A DNA stretch of 18,452 bases from Vitrella brassicaformis CCMP3155 (Eukaryota > Protista > Chromerida), in assembly GCA_001179505.1 (NCBI GenBank), contig CDMY01000808.1, forward strand, positions 1 to 18,452. The letters are read 5' to 3'. Numbering within the stretch: position 1 is the first letter of the stretch; every line of letters begins with the position of its first letter. A program made the translations under genes and the position numbers. Of this stretch, positions 1,072 to 18,452 are shown one piece after another. Below the pieces are notes generated by a model. It was not told the DNA's origin. It made no database searches and worked only from the letters and a program-made list of their open reading frames with translations.

Positions 1072-2032
1072 ATGGCTGACAAACCTTGTGCATCGCGCAT
1101 GCCACCCGAACCCGGCCAATCGCATAAGTCTCGAGCAGATGCAGGAGAGCTTCCGAGAGCTGTCGACGAGTATTTCAGCACAGATCACTGTCTGATGTCA
1201 GTGTCTAGTGTACATCACTGGACGGCAACAATGGGAGAGCTCATGCGTCAGGCAATCTTGATGTCGGTAAGTGAGGAAAAGAAGAATTGAGCCAATAGAG
1301 TGGTCACATAATTCGTGTGTACCATTCTCTGCATCCATGCACGTCAGTGCCGTTGGGGGAGCCATTCGTGTCGACAGACGTGAGGGCAGAAGGCGTCTCA
1401 CCACCAGCATCCGTGACACCGAGGGATACGGAGACCAATGGGAAGAATTCTGGTCAGTCGCTACGACCAACTGAGTCCCTCGCAACCCATTCCATCGGCG
1501 TTGACGATAGGACAGCTCCCTCTCAGGCCAACACCAACACACACGCTGCTGGAGAAGTTCAAAAGGAGCTCCCTGCCTCGCCCAGTGCCATGAGACAGAT
1601 GCGAGAGTCTATCTGCCACGCAAAGCCATTCGTGACGACGCGACAAATCCCGTGAGGCTTGAGCCGACAAAGGATGCCGTTGCTCTGTGGGAGTATCAAC
1701 GACGGAAGGCCGCACTCAGGGCAGAGATGCGAAGGGCAAATACACAATGGCTGCCTGATGTCTCAAGGCAAAAACATGATCATGCTTGCTTGCTGCTTGC
1801 GCACGTGCCATGTTTGTCATCAGGCTGAACGGTTGCAGGCCGAGAATACTGCACTGAAGGCGATGGTGAGAAGCGATACAGGCGCCACTCGTTGTAATCC
1901 GGGTGCTCTCTGCGTTGTATGTGGCTTTTCGTTACATATTAGGCTGACAAGGAGAGACAGGAGAAGGCGCAAGAGAGGACCGGAGCACCACTGAGCAGAT
2001 CAACAAGAACAGCGCTGCCAAGGGAGAGCTGA
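1072..2032 (+). CDS. Hypothetical coiled-coil protein, multi-exon, 5' exons uncertain; 3' end is chimeric with the duplicated block
   Basis: 3' exons join in phase 0: ...ALWEYQRRKAALRAEMRR | AERLQAENTALKAM | ADKERQEKAQE. This uses a putative GC-AG intron (1736-1823) and a GT-AG intron ending attag. The frame ends at TGA 2030-2032 inside the duplicated segment. Upstream frames are ambiguous. Confidence 0.35.
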
Positions 2033-2784
2033 TCGCAGGGATCGGTACCATCACCAGACGCACAGCACTCTCACGCGCATTTTGCCGCGTCCTTCTGGTT
2101 CAGAAAGTCTTCAGAGGATAGTTGCGTCCGGAGTGATGATCAAAGTGCAGTCGGCAGACGGAGAGCTGGTGGAGATCCCTCTCGAGGCGGCCCGGAGGTC
2201 AAACGTCGTCAAAGGCATCCTGGAGGGTGAGCAGAATCAATGCATTGACGGGCTTGCGAGTGGGTGCATTGTATGCAGCGCATTGCTTTCATCTGTGCAG
2301 GTGCTTCGGATGAGAGTCAGATCACTCTCCCCATCGATGCGCATCTGCTGAACATGGTATTTCACAAGTACTGCGGTCACTATGCTGGCAGGGAGATCCC
2401 TGTCATCAAGCCGCCACTGCAGTCGACGGACCACATCGGAGAAGTGAGTCATTATGACACACATACACGGCGGATGCGTGTGAGTGAGTGTCTGTGTGTG
2501 TGAGGATGAGTGTCTGTGTGTCGGTTCCTTGGTTGGCGTGTCATGTCAGGTGCTGCTGCTTGAGCGAGAGGTGCTGGGCACAGCCGATCGGCAAGAGCTG
2601 TACCAAGTCATGAAGGTACGTGACCGATATGGTACCCCATCCATCCATCGTCTGGTTGCGGTCATGCCTTCATTGCTGCATGCATCAGGCTGCTGATTGC
2701 TTGGACTTGCAATCGCTCCTACAGCTGACGTATGCCGCCATGGCGTGTCACATCAGGGTAGGTACGGCCACACACAGAGAGGCA
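1984..2784 (+). pseudogene. SKP1-like: Truncated duplicate of the Skp1 part of the 8889-12412 gene (Skp1 exons 2136-2226, 2301-2443, 2550-2615, 2689-2757)
   Basis: Spliced translation MIKVQSADGELVEIPLEAARRSNVVKGILE...AADCLDLQSLLQLTYAAMACHIR matches Skp1 family motifs. It aligns by eye, introns included, with 9051-9860. Homology stops inside an intron, so the SPQEIKDTF exon and everything downstream are missing. Confidence 0.8.
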
Positions 2785-3248: not shown

Positions 3249-4620
3249 TCAGCTCGAGACAGGCTGGCCGTTCTTCCACTGCCCCTGGCCCACCAGCTTG
3301 CCCTTGTTGTCGTAGCGGCAGAATGTGCCACTCACAAAGCTGCCGGCGTGCCACTCGCCCTCGAACTTCTTGCCGCCCGTCCCGTGGTCGTACTCGATGC
3401 CGTAGCCATGACGTTGGCCGTCCGCCCACTCTCCCTGGTACCTGCGGGCACAGAAGAGAAAGATGGACTTATGTATGTTGGCGGCGGCAGGATGGTGTGA
3501 TCTCGCTGCTCACCAGACAGTGCATCCGTCCTCGTAGAACATTGTGCCCTGGCCCTCTTTCTTGCCCTTGGACCATGCCCCTTCATAGGCCTTGTGGTGG
3601 GCGAAGGTACGGCCGCCCAGCTCTGGACGAGGACCGTAGTAATCACCTGGAGAAAGACACACAGGACACACATGCATTTCTCTCACGTCTTCTCGAGTCA
3701 GAGAAACCGTATTCGGTGCCGTGTCCGTGTCTCAGCCCATCAAGAAAGCCTCCCTTGTATTTGACGTTGCCCTGCATTGAGAACAGGACAAGGGAAACAG
3801 CCGGCTGATGCATTGGAAGGAGCGGCATCCGGGAATCCGTGTCTCGCTCACGTTGTGGAAGTGTTCGATGACCTCCTCGCTCTCGTCGATCTGGTCGTCC
3901 TTCCACTGGCACTTGAAGTGAGGGTTGCCGTTCGGAAAATAGGCGATGCCGACTCCGTTGCGCATTCCCTTGCTCCACTGGCCCTCGTACTCTTTCTTGT
4001 TGACCAAATCGCCGTCTCCTTCGTAGTACTTGATGCCCTTGCCGTGGAACACACCCTCGCGCCACTCTGAGGAACACAAGGAGGAATCAAAGTCTCTGCA
4101 TTCCTGTCGGATTGAGGTTCTGTTTTCGCACCTCCCTCGTAGCGCTTGGCATTGGGGGGCACATCAGGATTGGAAGTGATGCCCGCAGACAGGACGCCCC
4201 AGCCCTCAGGCACCTGCAGCCACTCACACAGTGCATCCCTCCCACAACGAATGAGGGATGCTCTCTGCTTAAGCTGACCCCTTTGCGAGCGGTGCCCTCG
4301 TATTTGCCGTCCATGTGCTCCAGGATGGTCGTCAGCCCGTCGTGTCGCGGCGTGGGGGAGTAGTTCTCGAGGGGCACAAGGCGCTTCAGACGCTCGTTCT
4401 CCTTCTGAAGGACGGCAAGCTCAGCGCGGGCGAGGTCGCGCTCGCGGACGGCTTCCATCTTGAGGCGGGTCTCTTCGAGCAGACGCTCATGGAGGAGTCC
4501 CTTCTCGACGTGCAGGTTGTGCAGCTGGTCTTTGAGTTTGTCGGTTGTCATGTCGCTGCTGGTGGGGAGCACCATGGCCTGGTGGTGCGTGTGCATCGGA
4601 GTGGGAGTTCCCGGCTGCAT
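3249..4620 (-). CDS. MORN-repeat protein with N-terminal coiled coil (copy A, 6 exons)
   Basis: Phase-consistent GT-AG splicing gives repeated Y-x-G-x-W-x-x-G-x-x-x-G-x-G motifs (YEGQWSKGMRNGVG, YKGGFLDGLRHGHG, YEGAWSKGKKEGQG, YQGEWADGQRHGYG). ATG at 4620, TGA at 3249-3251. Confidence 0.88.
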
Positions 4621-4862
4621 GGCTGCTCTTCAAACGACGTGAAGGTCCGGGAGTGGCTCAACAAAGCTTGGGGTAGAATCGGTATCCAAGGACCGTTGAA
4701 TGGCGCTTTGCTAATGGCGCTTCCGAGTCGTCGGTGATGGGGGGCCGCCCCCACCGTTTGCGAGCTCAAAAATCAGAAAACAGCGTAAATTCCGCCACCC
4801 GGCTTCTTTATGCTGCACCCCTTGAGGCTACAACAACAGCTGGGCATCTTTCTGCTCTGACA

Positions 4863-8408: not shown

Positions 8409-8888
8409 CTGAGAGATACACACACAAAGCGTATGATTCAAACCGCTCAGTCACTGCATCGGTTGCCTCTCCTGTTATGCAGCTTCCCTCTCTGCCTCGC
8501 CGTACATACCTGGATTGGTTGACTCCTCGGTGTGCCAAACAGAATCCCTCAGCAATATTGCCAGCTACACGAACGATATGACCTGCAGCATCAAACAGCA
8601 GACAGCCATGCACAGAGCCGTGTGTGATCTAATGCTCATCTCGTCAGCTCCTCTCATGGCAGCATTCTTACCTCAATTGGTCAGAGTAGCGTCATCCGCT
8701 GGAGATGGCCGCGGCGCTACCGATCGATATCATCTGTACGGCTCTCGTTGGCCCACAATAGGTACTCCGGGGCCGCTTATCCTCAATCAAAGAACATCCC
8801 CCATTTCTCTTTTCGCGAGCTTGAGGCGAGCTTGTATGCGAGGGGACCTGAGTTTGGACAAGGGAAGGCATGCATAGTGAAACTGCCC

Positions 8889-11800
8889 ATGGCAGAGCAA
8901 AGTGTAACCGTTGCTTTGGATGAGAAGCGCAAGCGGCTTGCCGTAATCGAGAAGCTGCTGCCTGCACTGCACGACAAGCCCACCGACCTCAACGCCCAGA
9001 GGGACAAGGCCGGCAAGGAGGACATCGAGAGCATCGACGGCAAGATCGCCAGCACCACTGAGCAGATCAACAAGAACACCGCTGCCAAGGGAGAGCTGAT
9101 CGCAGGGATAGGTACCACCACCAGACACACAGCACTGTCACGCGCATTTTGCCGCGTCCTTCTGGTTCAGAAAGTCTTCAGAGGATAGTTGGGTCCGGCG
9201 GAGTGATGATCAAAGTGCAGTCGGCAGACGGCGAGCTGGTGGAGATCCCTCTCGAGGCGGCCCGGAGGTCAAACGTCGTCAAAGGCATCCTGGAGGGTGA
9301 GCACAATCAACGAAACGAAGCGCTTGAAGTGGCACATGCAGCCGAGTACCTTTCTCTGTGCAGCTGCATCAGATCAGACTCAGATCTCCCTGCACGTCGA
9401 TGCGCATCTGCTGAACATGGTATTTCACAAGTACTGCGGCCATTATGGCGGCAGGGAGATACCAGCTATCAAGCAGCCACTGCAGTCGACGGACCACATC
9501 GGAGAAGTGAGTCACCATGACACACATACACCGGGAATGAGTGAGTGTGTGTGTGTGTGTGTGTGAGGATGAGTGTTTGTGTGTCGGTTCCTTCCTTGGT
9601 TGGCGTGTCATGTCAGGTGCTGCTGGTTGAGCGAGAGGTGTTAGGCACAGCCGATCGGCAAGAGCTGTATCAGGTCATGAAGGTACGTGACCGATGTGGT
9701 ACCCAATGGCATCCATCCATCGTCTGGTTGTGGTCATGCCTTGCTGCATGCAATTCACCAGGCTGCTGATTTCTTGGACTTGCAATCGCTCCTCCAGCTG
9801 ACGTACGCAGCCTACGCGTGTCACATCAGGGTAGGTACGGTCCACACACACCGAGAGGCAGCGAATCCATCCTGCCTTCTTTGTCGGTTCCTTTATCCGC
9901 CACAGGACATGAGCCCTCAGGAGATCAAGGACACTTTCGAACCGCTGGCCGCCCGCATGGGTGCAGACTTAGAGGTGCGCTGGGCGAGTAGAGGTCCACA
10001 CACATGAAGGCCTTTCCTACCTATCGCTCTCTGCTCATACAGGCCGACAGCGATAGCGAGTGTGAGTCAGAGAGCGAGTCTGTCGAGGGCGACAGCAGCG
10101 GCGAGGAGGGGAGAGACGAGAATGGTGACGGAGAGGGGGATGAGAACGCCGCGGTCGCCATGTCCACTCCAACAGCCACGGCACTAGGCGATGCTGACGG
10201 TACGTACGGGAAACGCAGCGAGCACCAGAGTGGATGAGGGCAAAACATCTGGGTGGGGGTGTGGATGTGTGTCGACATTCAGATGACGAATGGAGTGAGA
10301 GCGACGAAGACGACTCCGAGTGGTGTGCGAGCGACGACGATGGGGACAGTGACCTCAGCTCCGGCTCTTCCCTCGACAGCGACCCAGACAGACAATTCGG
10401 AGAATTCAAAACAGAGGTACAGTACGCAGGGAGGCAGGCAGAGAGACGCTAGTATCGTCCGTCATTGTGTGTCCATGGCATTCATGCAGGACGTCCCCCA
10501 TCTGTGTGGCATATTCCCATACCTTCCCATGTGGTGCGTCCGCGCCCTACCCGAGGAGCTCGTGGAGGCGGTGACTCCCCACTACCGCCATGTCCTCATC
10601 GACACGTCAGAGTTCAAGGAAGATATGCTCATCCTCGCAGACCTGGCGGCCACCAGAGAGTGGGGGAGCCGCCTAACCAATCTGACGACACTCACCGTCC
10701 GGCATAGATCTGTCAGTGACAGCCCGTCTACCGTCGCCCCACCCCCGACCTTCTATGAGTCCCTCAAGTGCCTATTGGCAGGGCATGTGGAGGGGCGGAA
10801 AAAGATGATCGACACCATGCGGCGTGAGGCGACGGGGTCAGGCCGAGGCCCTCCGTCGGCAGAGCTGCTACCGCACGGGAGCCTTACCACCATTCTCACC
10901 AGCATCGACGGGTACGTCCCTCCGTCCGGCCGGCCCACTGGCCCATCGCGGCCCCTTCCCTGCCTTCATGCTCTCACCAGCATCATCAACCTGCCGCCTG
11001 GCGCCATCGGCCTGGGTGACTGCTTCCAGCTGCCAGCCCTCGAATCCCTCACTCTCGCATCGGACGACTTGCGTCTTCTGCAGACCGCTGTGATGAAGTT
11101 CTATCGGCACTCTGCTCGTACGCCGACGCATCTGCCTGGCGAGGCAACTCCTGAGGAGAAGACGGCGATGTTCAGGGCGTTGGCAGCGCACTGGCCGGGC
11201 GAGGGCGGCCAGAGTGGAAGGCTCTTGAAGTTCTCGCGCCTGGCGTCCATCGGCACTGTGAGGCTCGAAAGAGGTCCTCTGGAAAGCCGCGATGCGATCC
11301 TGGAGCTCAGGGTGGGCATCCGTTTCACATCACATGCGGTGTGCATTTGTCTGTCTGTCCTTCCTTGGTTCTTTTCAGGACGTCTTGGCGCGTTACGGGT
11401 GTGTGGCGTCGCTGGAGCACCTCTCAATCGGCCTTCCGGGAGACAGCATAGTCGATGCCACATGGCTGCCTGTGTTCTCTGCTTTGGAGAGCTTCCACTC
11501 TGCCCTCTGCCGACCAGCCGTGTCGGTCCAGATCACTCACTTCAGCAATGCTCGCGGACTGATCATCGATCTGGGGTCCCTCCTGCCGTCCATGCAGCGC
11601 CATTCCTCGTACGCCACCCCTTTCGTCATGGAGTGCGTGCAGAAGACTGCTTGCCTCGCCACCGACCTCGACTGGACCATTGCTGCGGCGGACCTCGTCC
11701 AGCCGCCCGCGTATGACGCGGCAATCCGAGACTTCGTTGCCGGGCTATTGTTCCAGTGCGCTTGCCGTGTGACGGTGTGCAATGCTGATGGGCTGGCGCC

Positions 11801-12412
11801 GCCCGCCGATGCACAGGGGTGCAATGCATCCATTCTCGTAAGTGGCAAGCAACATCAAAGAAAACAGAACTGTCTGGCATTTCTCGTGGGCCGATTTTCC
11901 TGCGTTCAGGCAAATCTGTCGCGCGATTGCTTCCCTCACTCTGATTACAAGCTGACGCTGTCCAGCCGCCTCGGCTGCAGGATCGCCTGCCAGCTGGCCA
12001 GCAGACTCAAATGCACCGAGCTGATATGTCGTGGCGTGACGGTCGGCCAGGCGCTGCAGGTGATTTAGTCTATCGGCGACAGAGAACTCAAGGGAGCGGT
12101 GTTGGTGGTGGAGGATGTGGGCGTCGAGGGCATCATGTGGGGCGACAGGGCGACTGATTTGCCGCCGATCGAGAAGCTCGAGCTCAGCCTGACCGGTGAG
12201 CCAGGGAAGAGTGTTTTCGACGTGATTTGTTTGTATTTGTTTGTGCATTTGTTTGTGTATTTGTTTGTGCAGTGTCGGAGGATGTAGACAGTGACAGTTT
12301 CCACCATCTGACGTCGACATCGCTGCTGCGTCTGCGAGGCCTGCGTGGCCTCCACGTCATGGTCAACGGCAGGCCAATCATCAAGTATGGCACATGTTTG
12401 AGCACGGAATGA
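8889..12412 (+). CDS. SKP1-like: Putative fusion protein: coiled coil - Skp1 - acidic linker - F-box-like/LRR-like region (12 exons, in-frame TAG at 12066-12068)
   Basis: Exons 8889-9111, 9171-9296, 9364-9506, 9617-9682, 9762-9830, 9906-9974, 10043-10199, 10283-10416, 10490-11311, 11379-11837, 11910-12195, 12273-12412. All 11 introns are GT-AG and phase-consistent. About 808 aa to the TAG, about 897 aa to the final TGA. The Skp1 assignment is strong; the F-box/LRR assignment is motif-level only. An in-frame upstream start near 8748 is possible. Confidence 0.75.
12224..12272. repeat. Intronic 12-bp-unit tandem repeat (ATTTGTTTGTGY-like)
   Basis: atttgtttgt(at/gc/gt) units run up to the acceptor AG at 12271-12272. 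Confidence 0.8.
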
Positions 12413-12994
12413 CTGACTGACTGACAGACAGACAGACACTAGACGCTGCATGTGTAGCCCGATGTGTGAGCTGTCAAATCAGTGCATAGCTTTATTGCCA
12501 CAGTCTGGTTTGAGAGAAACACAGAACGGGCGAGTCAGACGACGTTCGTCTATTGTTCGTCTAAGCCTCAGACCAACACACCAGGATTCGTAGCAGGCAA
12601 ACACACCCATACAAAGCAAATGAGCGTGTGCAAATGACAACGCTCATTGACAACAAACATAAACACATGTATGTGGCACACGACACAGACGTGAGACACG
12701 AACCACAATAGACACAGCATTCAAATCCAGCATAGCACTTACACTTGACGCCAGCTGAACGTCCTATGTGAGGACATTCACGGCCTTCCACCTCTCTCTG
12801 GCTCCTTCTTAAGCCTTGTCGGCGAAGCTCAACGGGGGCCGAGGGGCCGGCAGCAAAGAGACTTCGGTGGAGTCCTCCCAATCGTCCCACTCCGTGCGAC
12901 GCTGCTGGTCACGCACACCAATCTGCACACCACACACCATACCACACACACACACACACACGATTCATGAATGGATGCACGAATGTATGCAATC

Positions 12995-15900
12995 TCACTT
13001 CTCCTTTACCGCCTCTCTGAAGGCCTGACGCAGGCCGTCCACCGTCAGCTCTGACGGCCTGCGGACACACACACACACACACACACTTGGTGCAGCCATG
13101 CTCGCCGTGTGTCTCCGTGCATGTGTCGCCCCATTCCTTCGTTGATTGATCGCCTCATGTACCTGAAGGGCTTGATGATCTGGTAGGTGCCCGACTGGCG
13201 CCCCACGTTGTTGCCCTCCTTTCGGGCATCCTGCAAGAAAACCAGTGAGTGCCCGGTACACGCCCAGCGCAGGCACTCCTGGAGGCGCGCGCAGTACCTG
13301 GAGCATCTGTGTGACTTGGTGGCTGGGCATTTGAGCAGGGTCGATGGTGCCCACAACCAGATGGTAATACCTGCGGATGAATGCGCAAACACCCACCCCA
13401 CGCACGCGCGCACGCATGGCTTTGTGTGCACATGGATGTCTCTCTGTTGGCTGTGCCTGTGTGTGTGTACCATACCCGCGGGGATGCCAGTGCACCCCAC
13501 GACGCATAGCACCCGGCTTCTCGCCTTGATCGTCCTCCTGATAGATGGATAGATGGATGGATGGATGGACTGGGTCACACAGGTGTGTGCGAGCGGTGGG
13601 TCTGTCTATCTGTTTTTTCTGCATGTCGGTGAGTGCACATGGCCTACGCGTTCCTTGGTCTGGCGCTTGCGCTTGCGCTTGCGCTGCGGGTCGGCCATTT
13701 GCTGTAACACAAGCACACAGACACAGGCACAGACACAAACAAACACAAAGGCGTGGGCACGTGTGTGGGTGTAGGGGTCGGTGGCTGATTGAGCCACGTG
13801 ATGTGTGTACGCACCTCCAGCCGCCTCCTGTCTATGTCGCGCTGCTCGTCCAGCAGGGACTTGGCGAACTGACACAACGCATAATTGCACATGGCGTGTG
13901 CATGGGATTGTGTGTGTGAGCAACGGACGGACCTGGTAGAGTTTTTCGCCTCTGAGGATCCTTCGTGACGTCAGGGCAGAAATGCCTTCACCTGCAGCCA
14001 CGCATTGCCAAGAATACACACCCTTGGGGCCGCTGTTGTGTGCGTGTCCGTGTGTGTGCACCATACCAGCATCAGGGCGCGGCAGAATGCGACGGCTGTT
14101 GGGAGAGTCACCAGTCTCCATGGCTGCTTCCTCCCTCTCCTGGTGCTCCTGGTCCTCCATCTCGACGACATCCCGCTTTCTCTTCTTCCCCTGTCCGGCT
14201 GCTGCCGCTGGTGCTGGTACGCGTGAGGCTGTCTGTGTGCTCTGTGTGCGAGTGAATGTTGGTGCGGTGAAGGGGCCGGTCGAGGGATGGGCATTGTGTC
14301 TGCTGAAAGTGGGGAGGCGATAGTCGGCTGCAGAGTCCAGACAGAGACATGATAAGGAAAGCACAGATTGTGCTAGCCTTTGGGCAGCCTTCTAATGATC
14401 CCTCCCCGTATCATGCAAACTGACCGTGTCTCATGCCGTTCTTCCACTGCCCCTGGCCCACCAGCTTGCCCTCGTTGCCGTAGCGCCAGAATGTGCCACT
14501 TACAAAGCTGCCGGCCTGCCATTCGCCCTCGAACTTCTTGCCGCCCGTCTCGTGGTCGTACTCGATGCCGTAGCCATGACGTTGGCCGTCCGCCCACTCT
14601 CCCTGGTACCTGCGGGCACAGCAGAGAGAGATGAAGACATGTGTGTCGGCGGCGGCAGGATGGTGTGATCTCGCTGCTCACCAGACAGTGCATCCGTCCC
14701 CGTAGAACACTGTGCCCTGACCCTCTTTCTTGCCCTTGGACCATCCCCCCTCGTAAGCCTTGTGGTGCGCAAGAGTGAGGCCTCTCAGAGCTGAATGGTG
14801 GTCGCGATAGTCGCCTGCAGACCCACATGTGGAGCGCACAGACACAGATGGGCCGTTTGCTTGTGTATGTTCGTGCTATATACGTGAGAGACGGCAGCGG
14901 TCGTCATCTGGAGACACACACATGAAAGCACAGAATGGTATGTGTCAGACTGTGTCTCGGTCCCCCTCTCATGTATCTGTGTGTCTCTACGAAGCAACTC
15001 ACTGTATTCAATGCCTTGTCCATGCTTCAGTCCGTCGAGAAAGCCTCCCTGGTATTTGACCTTGCCCTGTATCCAAAACACCGGCATCTGAAGTGTTGAT
15101 GGCCCCACTGTTCCCTGAGCCTCACTCACGTTATAGAAGTGTTCGATGACCTCTTCACTCTCGTCGATTTGGTCGTCCTTCCAGTGGCACTTCAAATGAG
15201 GCTTGCCGTTGGGGTAATAGGTGGTGCCGGGGCCGTTGCGCATTCCCTTGCTCCACTCGCCCTCGAACTTCTTGCAGCTTGTCCTTCCATCGTACTCGAC
15301 CCCATGGCCATGACGCTCGCCGTCCATCCACCTTCCCTCATACCTGCATGAAAAGATACGGGTGAGACGGGAACCTGCATTGCTTGTGAACAAGATGTCA
15401 GGTACTTTGCCTGATTGCCCACCAGGGAGTGCATCCGTCCTCGTAGAACAGTGTTCCCGAGCCCTCCCTCTTGTCCCTGGCCCAGCACCCCACGTAGACC
15501 TTCGGAGGGGCAACAGTGCGGCCGCTTGGAGCTGAATGGTGGTCGCGATAATGGCCTGCAGACCCACATGTGGAGCGCACAGACACAGATGGGCCGTTTG
15601 CTTGTGTATCTGTTCGTGCCATAGACACGTGCACCATACTTCTCTGGTATTCGGTGCCGTATCCACATCTGAGTCCGAAAAGCATCTGGCCCTCATACCT
15701 GACGCTGCCCTGCATGTGAATGGCACAAAGACAGACAGGACGGTATGGAGACGCTCTTTTTCACGTTTCTCAGTATAATGCTCTTCATTCGCCCATGTGG
15801 ACTCACTCACGTTGTCGTAGTATTCAATGACCTCCTTGCTGTCATCGATCTGGTCGTCCTTCCAGTGGCACTCGAAGTGAGGGTTGCCGTTCGGAAAATA

Positions 15901-16514
15901 GGCGGTCCCTTCCCCATTGCGCCTTCCATGGTTCCACTGGCCATCGTACTCTTTCTTGTTGATTAGGTCTCCAGCTCCTCCATAATATTTGATGCCATCG
16001 CCATGAAACAAGCCCCCACGCCACTCTGAAGGCCAGAAATGGGCGTCCAAGCAGTGTATAGGTTTGTTTTCTATCGTTGCTGGCTCCCTCACCTCCTTCG
16101 TATCGTTTGGCGTTGAGGGAGACGTGTCGATTGGAAGAGCTGGTTATACGCAGAACGCCCCAGCCCTCAGGCACCTGTGTCCACATAGGCAAGATGGACC
16201 TCCTGGCGATGGATGAGTTTCATCCAGCCCCTTTGGTCCATGCTCACCCCGTTTCGTATCATGCCCTCGTACTTGCCCCCCCTCAAACGATCGTTTCGCC
16301 TGTCAAAGACGCCATGATGAGCGCGGGCGAGGTCAACCTCACACATAGCCCCCACGATCTTTAGGCGGTTCTCTTTCATCATCTCTTCGAGGAGACAGTC
16401 GTGAAGCGGCCCGTTCTCAACAGTCTGTGTCATGTCGGTTGTCGTGTCGCTGCTGGTGGGGAGCACCATGGCCTGGTGATGCGTGTGCATCGGAGTGTGA
16501 GTTCCCGGCTGCAT
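12995..16514 (-). CDS. Putative fusion protein: coiled coil - MORN repeats (copy B) - basic NLS-like patches - AP2-like domain (18 exons)
   Basis: Ten MORN-region exons (16514 to 14425) splice in phase. A phase-1 gtcagt...tgcag intron (14424-14328) joins them to eight more in-phase exons with KKRKR and RKRKRKR, ending GVHWHPRGYYHLVV...KPFRPSELTVDGLRQAFREAVKEK*. Without that intron the MORN part stops at TGA 14411-14413. MORN is confident; the fusion and the AP2 call are moderate. Confidence 0.65.
14789..15609. repeat. Intragenic tandem duplication of a multi-exon MORN module
   Basis: 80-nt segments 14789-14868 and 15530-15609 differ at only 2 positions and include identical intron sequence. 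The exons ...HWKDDQID.S.EVIE.. and G.V.Y.G each occur twice. Confidence 0.9.
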
Positions 16515-17246
16515 GGCCGCTCGTCAAACGACGTGAAGGCCAGGGAGTGGTTCAACAAAGCTTGGGGCGGAGTCCGTATCCAAGGACCGTTGAATGGCGT
16601 CACCACAGGAAGATAAGTCACTGTTTTGCACTGTTTCGGGAGAGACTTGGGCTTTTAGGCAAGGAAACGTTTCGCGCCCATCTAAGCTCGCCCGAATGAA
16701 AGCAAAGCAGAGTGCCGCAGGTGGTTCTGTGAAGCAGAATCGATGCAAACGGATGCACTGAGTAATCCCTGTCTCACAGCTTCCTGAATTACCCACACAC
16801 TCCTGAGAACGGACCGCTCCTCTCCACCCTTGTACAGAAGTCGGTCCTGATCAGGCGTGTGCACGTCGTTCCGAGGCTCACCGACACTCTTGGACGACTT
16901 CTGACCCCTCGCCCAATCATTTCTGGTACGTTGAGGCACTCAAAAGATCCGATCTTATCATGTACACACTAACATACGTACGTATACGTATCTGCATGGC
17001 CTCCTGACTCAGAGACCCACAGACACCTCGCCGACTGTCTGCTTGTCCCTCTGCTATACCTGCAGCACGAGATCTGCCGTGTGCAGTAACTTTTTGACGT
17101 TTGACGTAATTGAGGCGACCATGGAGGGGACCAGATGCGTCTGATCATATTTCTATCTACACTCAACTCGTTGCACACCATGTTAGTTAGCATCGCACCA
17201 CGCTGTGCTGTGTTTCGTGGGCCATGCCATGCGCACAAATTATTAT

Positions 17247-17893: not shown

Positions 17894-18452
17894 CATCAGT
17901 CGAGTCACATAAGTGTGTGCTTGCTTGTCAGTCAATCAATGAATTGATTCCATTCATTCATTCAGTGAACTCCCTCGGTTGCTTCGCTTGGGAGACGGCC
18001 GTGATCCTGGCCTGACTGGCCACGAGGTGGCCGGCCATGGGTGTCTCACATCACCCATACATGGTCAATATAGCCGGCCACCCTATATAGAAACACCCAC
18101 CCTCCTCCCCCGTCGGGTCTTCCGGCGGAAGAGCCGACGGGAGAGGTGTACGTATACATGTATTTCTACGAATGTGTACCCTGTAAAGGGTATACGTACA
18201 CCTCTCCCGTCGGCTCTTCCGCCGGAAGACCCGACGGGGGAGGAGGGTGGGTGTTTCTATATAGGGTGGCCGGCTATATTGACCATGTATGGGTGATGTG
18301 AGACACCCATGGCCGGCCACCTCGTGGCCAGTCAGGCCAGGATCACGGCCGTCTCCCAAGCGAAGCAACCAGGGAGTTCACTGAATGAATGAATGGAATC
18401 AATTCATTGATTGACTGACAAGCAAGCACACACTTATGTGACTCGACTGATG
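17894..18452. repeat. Long near-perfect palindrome (arms 17894-18157 and 18190-18452, 32-nt spacer) cut off by the window end
   Basis: The arms are reverse complements apart from one indel (ccctcggttg on the left, caaccaggg on the right). The right arm runs to the last base, so the true arm length is unknown. Confidence 0.97.

What the first reader, a model, noticed from the sequence alone, without database searches (positions are those of the whole stretch)
8889..12412. Skp1 fused in one polypeptide to its own F-box-like/LRR-like receptor: a possible self-contained SCF module
Eleven phase-consistent introns join a Skp1 domain, through a long Asp/Glu/Ser linker, to a region that starts PHLCGIFPYLPMWCVRAL (resembles F-box L..IF.YL) and continues with LxxLxL-type units (LTNLTTLTV, LPALESLTL, LEHLSIGL, IEKLELSL). 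In canonical SCF ligases Skp1 and the F-box protein are separate, exchangeable subunits; combining adaptor and receptor in one chain is the BTB-Cul3 strategy. A natural Skp1-F-box-LRR fusion would hard-wire one receptor to Cul1. I do not know of a described example but cannot search.
Basis: partly seen in the sequence, partly recalled or inferred. Interest (0 to 1): 0.8.

Follow-up and report, generated by a model that had tools for sequence, protein, structure and literature searches.

The report
Natural Skp1 fused to F-box-like receptor
In the alga Vitrella brassicaformis one transcribed gene joins a Skp1-like adaptor domain to an F-box-like, leucine-rich-repeat receptor domain, two parts of a protein-tagging machine that are normally separate proteins, but this copy is cut short by a stop codon and its function is untested.

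Summary
The gene is real. The spliced product equals an annotated 808-aa protein of Vitrella brassicaformis CCMP3155.

- **Skp1 part:** residues 87-221 are a divergent Skp1 domain. It passes the Pfam Skp1_POZ cut-off and matches human SKP1 at E=1.4e-11 through helix 7. It has no helix 8.
- **Linker:** 97 residues, 57% Asp/Glu/Ser, net charge -34.
- **C-terminal part:** it has no Pfam or PDB sequence match. A confident AlphaFold model (pLDDT 88) shows three short helices followed by a leucine-rich-repeat (LRR) solenoid. Its best structural neighbours are F-box-LRR receptors (D3, COI1, TIR1, FBXL17, Skp2).
- **Family:** the C-terminal part belongs to a Vitrella-only family of at least 59 proteins. 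Only two of them carry Skp1.

Two paralogs have GAG there, and it removes about 88 conserved residues. The sister fusion is frameshifted, and selection on the receptor part looks near neutral.

The architecture is confirmed. A working single-chain SCF (Skp1-cullin-F-box ligase) module is plausible but unproven. The scan noted similar fusions on other pieces of this genome. I found only engineered fusions in the literature.

The parts
8889..12068 (+). Coding region of the fusion gene (11 coding exons, 10 introns, stop TAG 12066-12068); product = P0001, 808 aa, Vitrella brassicaformis CCMP3155
   Evidence: Hand model. Spliced joints in X5/X6. 100% identity to P0001.
8889..9111 (+). Exon 1: N-terminal ~74 residues with no family match; absent from paralog P0002, which starts at MIKV
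   Evidence: No significant Pfam hit. RNA-like contig 8859-9109 + 9169-9295 + 9363-9482 joins it to the Skp1 exons (table 8). blastn finds no E1 in L002.
9171..9974 (+). Exons 2-6: Skp1-like domain (P0001 residues ~87-221): BTB/POZ part plus helices H5-H7; no H8
   Evidence: Skp1_POZ E=1.4e-5, 25.6 bits against cut-off 21.9. Skp1 C-terminal domain sub-threshold at 13.8 bits. phmmer against human SKP1 in PDB gives E=1.4e-11, aligned to SKP1 residues 4-134.
10043..10416 (+). Exons 7-8: acidic linker (residues 233-329, 57% Asp/Glu/Ser, net charge -34), predicted disordered
   Evidence: Composition. pLDDT <50 in model mb0909cfc2442. Joints 9975-10042, 10200-10282 and 10417-10489 seen in RNA-like contigs.
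10490..10582 (+). F-box-like three-helix motif (residues ~328-360, starting two codons before in exon 8): VPHLCGIFPYLPMWCVRALPEELVEAVTPH
   Evidence: Helices at model residues 4-10, 19-23 and 27-36, followed by the first strand. Family motif alignment A5. Sub-threshold Pfam F-box-like hits in relatives P0006 and P0035. No hit for P0001 itself.
10589..12065 (+). LRR solenoid (residues ~363-808) across exons 9-11, introns 11312-11378 and 11838-11909; member of a Vitrella-only family
   Evidence: AlphaFold pLDDT 88.2, pTM 0.86, alternating strand/helix. Foldseek and VIA matches to D3, COI1, TIR1, FBXL17, Skp2, RanGAP and ribonuclease inhibitor. Family of 59 proteins, all Vitrella where a source or organism is recorded.
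12066..12068 (+). In-frame TAG that ends the ORF early; paralogs L002 and L001 have GAG (Glu) here
   Evidence: Present in DNA-like and RNA-like contigs with 0 differences (table 8). Alignment to paralogs.
12069..12412 (+). Former coding tail after the stop: 12069-12195, spliced intron 12196-12272, 12273-12412 (TGA); still homologous to the C-terminus of paralog P0003
   Evidence: BLASTP to P0003 gives 56% identity, E=8e-12, and 61%, E=0.002. GT..AG joint seen in X1, X5 and X6.

Best explanation
This is an expressed chimeric gene of Vitrella brassicaformis. It encodes, in one chain, a short N-terminal segment with no family match, a divergent Skp1-like adaptor domain (BTB/POZ plus helices H5-H7), a 97-residue highly acidic disordered linker, and a receptor domain. 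The receptor domain is an F-box-like three-helix motif followed by an LRR solenoid. It belongs to a Vitrella-specific, fast-evolving family that is usually not fused to Skp1.

The most likely mode of action is inferred, not shown. The F-box-like helices pack on Skp1-like helices H5-H7, probably within the same chain, since the linker is long enough. This would give a pre-assembled adaptor-receptor unit. Its POZ face could dock on Cul1 and its LRR surface could bind a target, much like engineered Skp1-TIR1 fusions.

This copy has lost about 88 C-terminal residues to a GAG->TAG change, and the receptor part shows little purifying selection. It is probably a young member of a birth-and-death receptor family rather than a conserved core component.
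For: - **One transcript:** spliced joints for all introns in RNA-like contigs, absent from the DNA-like run.
- **Gene model:** identical to P0001.
- **Skp1 domain:** Pfam Skp1_POZ above its cut-off. Human SKP1 match at E=1.4e-11 through H7.
- **Receptor fold:** AlphaFold pLDDT 88.2, pTM 0.86. Foldseek top hits are D3, COI1 and TIR1 (E from 1e-6). VIA gives FBXL17 Z 8.6, Skp2 7.8, TIR1 7.7, FBXL3 7.0. For Skp2, FBXL3 and one FBXL17 entry (6w66) the aligned chain range begins near the chain's N-terminal end, where I recall the F-box lies.
- **F-box signals:** the ten nearest named ESM-Atlas feature clusters are all F-box families. A shape search with my model puts F-box clusters nearest. The family motif is F-box-like, with Pfam F-box-like hits at E=0.011 in P0006 and 0.067 in P0035. 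UniProt names family member P0046 an F-box domain-containing protein.
- **Constraint on Skp1:** dN/dS 0.47 against the sister copy, p=0.02.
- **Sister copy:** a second fused paralog, P0002, is also transcribed.
- **Precedent:** engineered Skp1-TIR1 fusions are in use in fission yeast (PMC8229956).
Against: - P0001 has no Pfam F-box or LRR hit, and family profiles find nothing among PDB sequences.
- P0001 has Val where the family motif has its conserved Trp.
- The Skp1-like domain lacks helix H8. In solved complexes H8 inserts between the F-box and the LRR (PMC13237083).
- The Pfam Skp1 C-terminal domain is below its cut-off.
- The model of Skp1 + linker + F-box-like part was poor (pLDDT 64, pTM 0.52). 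The tool gives no contact map, so docking is untested.
- The gene carries a premature TAG followed 127 nt later by a spliced intron. Its sister copy is frameshifted.
- dN/dS of the receptor part is 0.79, not distinguishable from neutral (p=0.15).
- Cul1 binding was not examined at all.
Confidence: 0.5

Rival explanations
1. It is a decaying or not-yet-functional chimeric gene. A segmental duplication placed a Skp1-like module upstream of a member of the expanding receptor family. The chimera is transcribed but is drifting toward a pseudogene and has no ubiquitin-ligase role.
For: - There is a premature TAG where two paralogs have GAG.
- The sister fusion P0002 is frameshifted, and the frameshift is visible in RNA-like contigs.
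- The receptor part has dN/dS 0.79 (p=0.15) and the post-stop tail 1.13.
- A further partial copy of the Skp1 module lies at 1984-2784. It is 88% identical including introns, which shows the module is being duplicated locally.
- The stop lies 127 nt before a spliced junction. By inference this may expose the mRNA to nonsense-mediated decay.
Against: - The Skp1 part shows purifying selection (dN/dS 0.47, p=0.02).
- All introns keep their splice sites and the frame is open for 808 codons.
- Both fused copies are transcribed.
- The truncation removes only the last ~88 residues of the solenoid.
- High turnover and relaxed or diversifying selection are, from my own knowledge, usual for large F-box families.
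Confidence: 0.25
2. The Skp1-like domain is a Cul1-independent cap. It binds the adjacent F-box-like motif and keeps the receptor out of SCF complexes, or stabilises it. The protein would then act as a non-degradative LRR scaffold or as a decoy.
For: - The Skp1-like domain is divergent: the C-terminal Pfam domain is sub-threshold and H8 is missing.
- From my own recollection, the canonical motif AANYLDI contributes to the Cul1 contact. It reads AADFLDL here.
- Most family members manage without a fused Skp1.
Against: - The POZ part still passes the Skp1_POZ cut-off.
- No residue-level test of the Cul1 surface was possible.
- There is no positive evidence for loss of Cul1 binding.
Confidence: 0.13
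3. The C-terminal domain is an LRR protein whose N-terminal helices are not an F-box. In that case the Skp1-like domain serves another purpose, such as oligomerisation or recruiting other F-box proteins in trans.
For: - Sequence methods do not recognise an F-box in P0001.
- The best VIA matches overall are non-F-box LRR proteins: RanGAP Z 10.1 and NLRC4 Z 9.0.
- TM-scores are low, 0.2-0.5.
Against: - Helices of the right number lie directly before the first LRR strand.
- The weak Pfam F-box-like hits in relatives are in register with the start of the profile.
- All ten best Atlas feature hits are F-box families.
Confidence: 0.1
4. There are two separate genes, a Skp1-like gene and a receptor gene, wrongly merged.
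For: RNA-like contigs of three runs (X1, X5, X6) carry unrelated sequence before position 10428, inside intron 8. This could be an alternative 5' exon for a Skp1-less isoform (table 7).
Against: - Spliced joints 9975-10042, 10200-10282 and 10417-10489 connect the Skp1 exons to the receptor exons in frame.
- There is no stop between them.
- The paralog P0002 has the same layout.
- The foreign 30-mer was not found in the window or in the fetched loci, and the join lies in GA-rich low-complexity sequence.
Confidence: 0.02

Closest known systems
Canonical SCF pair: Skp1 plus an F-box/LRR receptor (FBXL type such as Skp2, FBXL3 and FBXL17; plant TIR1, COI1 and D3/MAX2)
   Same: There is a Skp1-type POZ domain with helices H5-H7. 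The receptor has three helices followed by an LRR solenoid. The best structural neighbours are these receptors.
   Different: The two parts are in one polypeptide, joined by a 97-residue acidic linker. Skp1 helix H8 is missing. Pfam does not recognise the F-box or the LRR. The receptor family is found only in Vitrella.
Engineered Skp1-F-box fusions (Skp1-TIR1 in the fission-yeast auxin degron system; PMC8229956, 10.1101/2021.07.19.452993)
   Same: An adaptor and an F-box-LRR receptor are joined in one chain.
   Different: Those fusions are man-made. The paper's abstract says the existing fission-yeast system is limited in efficiency because TIR1 is fused to Skp1. Here the fusion is natural, uses a long disordered linker, and its activity is unknown.
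BTB-domain substrate adaptors of Cul3 ligases
   Same: The logic is the same: a POZ-fold cullin-binding domain and a substrate-binding domain in one polypeptide.
   Different: The POZ domain here is of the Skp1 type (Pfam Skp1_POZ), not BTB. An F-box-like element lies between the two parts. The cullin partner was not tested. This comparison rests on my own knowledge.
Skp1-like proteins with extensions (plant SKP1-like 20, PDB 8if6_B)
   Same: It is a divergent Skp1 paralog, matched at E=2.5e-6.
   Different: The PDB chain is only 175 residues long. A short, non-receptor extension in those plant proteins is my own recollection.

Membership tests
Skp1 family | N-terminal BTB/POZ-like domain (Pfam PF03931 Skp1_POZ) | tested here: met
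   P0001 residues 87-144, E=1.4e-5, 25.6 bits against cut-off 21.9. Exon 2 alone gives E=7.5e-5.
Skp1 family | C-terminal helices H5-H8 that hold the F-box (Pfam PF01466) | tested here: inconclusive
   PF01466 gives 13.8 bits against cut-off 22.3, covering profile positions 1-27 of 48. phmmer aligns residues 88-221 to human SKP1 4-134 at E=1.4e-11, that is through H7. No residues correspond to H8; the acidic linker follows instead.
Skp1 family | Binding to the Cul1 N-terminal domain | not testable with these tools
   There was no contact read-out and no Cul1 sequence in hand. A literature check for interface residues gave nothing usable.
F-box proteins | Sequence match to an F-box profile (PF00646 or PF12937) | tested here: not met
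   P0001 has no hit even at E<=10. Of 36 family motifs, only 2 reach F-box-like and 1 reaches F-box, all below the cut-offs (best E=0.0072). Profiles A5 and A4 find no F-box protein among PDB sequences.
F-box proteins | Three-helix motif directly before the substrate-binding repeats | tested here: met
   Helices at model residues 4-10, 19-23 and 27-36, then strand 39-43. VIA alignments to Skp2 (chain 96/100 onward), FBXL17 (320 onward) and FBXL3 (38 onward) start at model residue 1.
F-box proteins | Binding to Skp1 | not testable with these tools
   The model of residues 80-470 had pLDDT 64 and pTM 0.52 and came without a contact map. The VIA search with it was uninformative, Z<=4.6.
Leucine-rich repeat proteins (ribonuclease-inhibitor / FBXL type) | Solenoid of alternating beta-strand and helix | tested here: met
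   pLDDT 88.2, pTM 0.86. RanGAP Z 10.1, NLRC4 9.0, FBXL17 8.6, ribonuclease inhibitor 8.2. 35 Foldseek matches at E<=0.001, nearly all LRR proteins.
Leucine-rich repeat proteins (ribonuclease-inhibitor / FBXL type) | Match to a Pfam LRR profile | tested here: not met
   No LRR family at E<=1 in P0001-P0003, and none at E<=0.01 in 28 members.

The most novel reading that the evidence does not exclude
Vitrella makes natural single-chain SCF substrate receptors. A Skp1-like domain is tethered to its own F-box-LRR receptor and plugs directly into Cul1. This would bypass the exchangeable Skp1 pool, and with it the oxygen-dependent Skp1 glycosylation control that protists use. It would be a Cul3/BTB-like solution evolved inside the Cul1 system, and it recurs at several loci of this genome.
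Probability: 0.33. Interest if true: 0.8.

Novelty: new variant of a known kind. Interest (0 to 1): 0.55.

Why it matters
SCF ligases are built on the idea that one Skp1 adaptor is shared by many exchangeable F-box receptors. A natural fusion of adaptor and receptor would show that evolution has also tried the hard-wired design otherwise known from Cul3/BTB ligases and from engineered degron tools.

It would offer a test case for several questions:
- how receptor exchange works;
- whether Skp1 helix H8 is dispensable;
- whether such a receptor escapes control through Skp1 modification.

It also gives a fold and a probable role to a Vitrella-only family of at least 59 proteins that are almost all annotated as uncharacterised.

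The weight of this particular locus is limited. It is truncated, weakly constrained and has no protein-level evidence.

Tried and rejected
- **Pfam on single exons.** Only exon 2 hit Skp1_POZ. The other exons were too short or have no family.
- **Family profiles against PDB sequences.** No F-box or LRR protein was found, so sequence profiles of this kind cannot settle the F-box question.
- **Long Skp1-domain proteins.** I searched with the Skp1 region of P0001, with candidates of 444-1414 aa. Only P0001 and P0002 came back. This word-based search does not exclude divergent fusions elsewhere.
- **AlphaFold of residues 80-470.** This was meant to show docking of the F-box-like helices on the Skp1-like domain. 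The Skp1 part had only two or three sequences in the alignment and folded poorly. No contact map is returned. pTM 0.52 is higher than I would expect for two independent domains, but that is indirect. The VIA search with this model was uninformative.
- **P0027 as a third fusion.** Its first residues look like Skp1 H5/H6 by eye, but BLASTP gives E=1.2 and Pfam gives nothing. I left it as a lead.
- **TAG as an error or a reassigned codon.** I rejected an assembly or sequencing error. The TAG stands in DNA-like and RNA-like contigs of four runs from four different studies. I judged reassignment of TAG unlikely. The annotated Vitrella proteins used here fit the standard code and both paralogs have GAG at that place. 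Read-through was not tested.
- **Loose end at 10428.** The foreign sequence was not located.
- **Literature.** I found only engineered Skp1 fusions and no natural Skp1-F-box fusion. The library is incomplete, so this is not proof of absence.
- **Scan notes by sequence.** Both look-ups were blank.
- **Method note on length limits.** To reach full-length relatives I used the uninterrupted window ORF 10253-11713 as query, with scoring limited to the exon-9 residues.
- **Method note on joining exons.** The joined product was used only as the database protein P0001.
Full report
**Source and gene model**

The window comes from Vitrella brassicaformis CCMP3155, a photosynthetic relative of apicomplexan parasites. 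This identification rests on a protein identical to the window's product.

Three-frame translation gives a + strand gene with these exons:

| Exon | Coordinates |
|---|---|
| E1 | 8889-9111 |
| E2 | 9171-9296 |
| E3 | 9364-9506 |
| E4 | 9617-9682 |
| E5 | 9762-9830 |
| E6 | 9906-9974 |
| E7 | 10043-10199 |
| E8 | 10283-10416 |
| E9 | 10490-11311 |
| E10 | 11379-11837 |
| E11 | 11910 onward |

All introns are GT..AG and phase-consistent. The annotated protein P0001 (808 aa, named 'SKP1 component POZ domain-containing protein' by UniProt) matches this model residue for residue. Single exons were searched by reference. The joined product was used only as the database record P0001.

**Transcript evidence**

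Of the runs that hold this stretch, X2 behaves as DNA. It covers everything and shows no joints. X5 and X6 carry spliced contigs.

- Ten of the eleven introns appear as GT..AG joints. These include the critical ones between the Skp1 exons, the linker exons and the receptor exon: 9975-10042, 10200-10282 and 10417-10489.
- For intron 9 only a paralog-type variant joint is listed, plus a contig whose match ends at 11310.
- Equal contig depths show that E4-E5-E6 share one contig and that E6-E7-E8 share another. E8-E9 is bridged by a further contig.
- One contig runs from 8859 through E1, E2 and E3.

That test is not met. The kinds of these runs are not on record, and contigs cannot prove one full-length molecule, so long-read cDNA remains desirable.

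**The missed stop codon**

There is an in-frame TAG at 12066-12068.

- It is present with zero differences in the DNA-like contig and in RNA-like contigs that are spliced at 11838-11909 but continuous across the TAG (table 8).
- The sequence after it (12069-12195, intron 12196-12272, 12273-12412) is still homologous at protein level to the C-terminus of paralog P0003.
- Both paralogous loci have GAG at that codon.

This copy has therefore lost about 88 conserved residues to a single-base nonsense change. The eleventh intron lies in what is now 3' untranslated sequence, 127 nt after the stop.

**The Skp1 part**

- Residues 87-144 pass the Pfam Skp1_POZ cut-off.
- The C-terminal Skp1 domain is only partly matched and is below its cut-off.
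- Against solved structures, residues 88-221 align with human SKP1 residues 4-134 at E=1.4e-11, that is through helix H7.
- No sequence corresponds to helix H8. In solved complexes H8 inserts between the F-box and the LRR (PMC13237083).

The domain is thus a real but divergent Skp1 relative. Its cullin-binding ability was not tested.

**The linker**

Residues 233-329 are 57% Asp/Glu/Ser with net charge -34. They are predicted disordered.

**The C-terminal part**

- It has no Pfam match and no sequence match in the PDB, even as a family profile.
- An exhaustive search of 1.84 billion representatives found 27 relatives. A profile search found 41. Together these make 59 proteins. Every one with a source name or organism on record is from Vitrella.
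- Only P0001 and P0002 carry Skp1_POZ. Other members have MORN repeats or other N-terminal parts. UniProt names two of them SH3 and START domain-containing proteins.
- With this family as alignment, AlphaFold gave a confident model: pLDDT 88.2, pTM 0.86. It shows three short helices followed by a regular strand/helix solenoid.
- Foldseek's best matches are the plant F-box-LRR receptors D3/MAX2, COI1 and TIR1, then NLRP-type LRRs, FBXL3 and ribonuclease inhibitor.
- VIA-align gives RanGAP Z 10.1, NLRC4 9.0, FBXL17 8.6, ribonuclease inhibitor 8.2, Skp2 7.8, TIR1 7.7 and FBXL3 7.0. The alignments to Skp2, FBXL3 and one FBXL17 entry begin at model residue 1 and near the start of those chains' listed ranges.

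The LRR fold is well supported.

**Is the N-terminal motif an F-box?**

For:
- Across the family the motif reads DxPGxLxxVxAFLPLHLLxxLSxxxWxxAAP...THLxID. By eye this follows the F-box pattern.
- Two members give sub-threshold Pfam hits in register with the start of the profile: P0006 at E=0.011 and P0035 at E=0.067 for F-box-like (P0035 also 0.1 for F-box).
- The ten nearest named ESM-Atlas feature clusters are all F-box families at score 0.90.
- A shape search with my model puts F-box clusters nearest.
- UniProt names one member an F-box domain-containing protein.

Against:
- P0001's own motif (VPHLCGIFPYLPMWCVRALPEELVEAV) is more degenerate. It has Val at the family's Trp position and gives no Pfam hit even at E<=10.

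I rate the F-box reading at about 0.7.

**Docking test**

A model of residues 80-470 (Skp1-like domain, linker, F-box-like motif and first repeats) had only two or three sequences covering the Skp1 part. It came out at pLDDT 64 and pTM 0.52. The tool returns no contact information and the structure search with this model was uninformative.

**Evolutionary state**

- The sister fusion P0002 (locus L002) shares 83-84% identity. It lacks exon 1.
- P0002 carries a one-base insertion at the place equivalent to window 11481. The insertion shifts the frame and is visible in RNA-like contigs. The rest of its receptor domain was called as a separate gene.
- P0003 (L001) has the receptor domain without Skp1 as annotated.
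- Between the window gene and L002, dN/dS is 0.47 in the Skp1 part (excess of synonymous change, p=0.02). It is 0.56 in the linker, 0.79 in the receptor part (p=0.15, not separable from neutral) and 1.13 after the stop.
- A partial copy of the Skp1 module lies 7 kb upstream in the same window, at 1984-2784. It is 88% identical to 9051-9860 including introns. It runs from the end of exon 1 through exon 5.

Local duplication of the Skp1 module is a likely route to the fusion. The picture is of a young, fast-turning-over gene family, not a conserved component.

**Interpretation**

- Shown: one spliced transcript; a Skp1-like domain; an acidic linker; an LRR solenoid of a Vitrella-only family; a premature stop.
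- Inferred: the three helices are an F-box relative that packs on the Skp1-like helices, giving a pre-assembled adaptor-receptor that could dock on Cul1.
- Rivals: a decaying chimera; a Cul1-independent cap or decoy; an LRR protein without a true F-box.

**Comparison and novelty**

The library of papers yielded only engineered Skp1 fusions, such as Skp1-TIR1 in fission yeast (PMC8229956). It yielded no natural Skp1-F-box fusion. A study of Toxoplasma F-box proteins that included Vitrella does not mention one (PMC11570480).

The scan itself has noted similar fusions on other pieces of this genome. One of those was followed up with the same conclusion, that no published example was found. I could not check those loci.

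I class this as a new variant of a known kind. Interest is moderate because function is untested and this copy is truncated.

Noticed in passing
window 1984-2784 (+): A partial second copy of the Skp1 module, 88% identical in DNA to 9051-9860 including introns. It covers the end of exon 1 through exon 5 and then diverges. Its exon-2 equivalent hits Skp1_POZ (E=4.6e-5). Loose ends at 9051 and 9840 in the laid contigs match its flanks, so it seems to be present in the RNA-like run X6 as well.
   Followed up: partly
window 10428 (inside intron 8): Contigs of X1, X5 and X6, but not of the DNA-like X2, carry 122-255 unrelated letters before 10428. The 30-letter consensus is absent from the window and from L001-L003. 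It may be an alternative 5' exon, an unassembled paralog, or a chimera at GA-rich sequence.
   Followed up: partly
L002 6001-9238 (contig CDMY01000648.1): The sister fusion gene P0002 is split by a +1 frameshift, equivalent to an extra C after window 11481. The annotation calls the remainder of its receptor domain as a separate 224-aa gene (8426-9238). The frameshifted form is seen in RNA-like contigs.
   Followed up: partly
L003 113-2119 (contig CDMY01000363.1, gene cut by the contig start): Family member P0027 begins with AASYLHIPRLIQIAQIKIALYLRAESSPSEI. By eye this resembles Skp1 helices H5-H7, and a short linker and the F-box-like motif follow. The similarity is not significant (BLASTP E=1.2, no Pfam hit). 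It may be a third, older fusion.
   Followed up: partly
window 8870-8923 (+): A short upstream ORF of 17 codons (ATG at 8870). It overlaps the main ATG at 8889 in another frame and lies inside the transcribed 5' region (contigs start at 8848/8859).
   Followed up: no
window 17894-18452: The last 559 bases are a 96% self-inverted repeat.
   Followed up: partly
window 3267-4705 versus 14435-16599: Several direct repeats of 74-92% identity link the region upstream of the fusion gene with the region downstream (for example 3267-3620 with 14435-14788). The window is a mosaic of segmental duplications.
   Followed up: no
window 9545-9566, 12215-12270, 12412-12440: Simple repeats lie in and near the gene: (GT)n in intron 3, TGTTTGT-type units in the last intron, and ACTG/ACAG units right after the TGA at 12410.
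   Followed up: no
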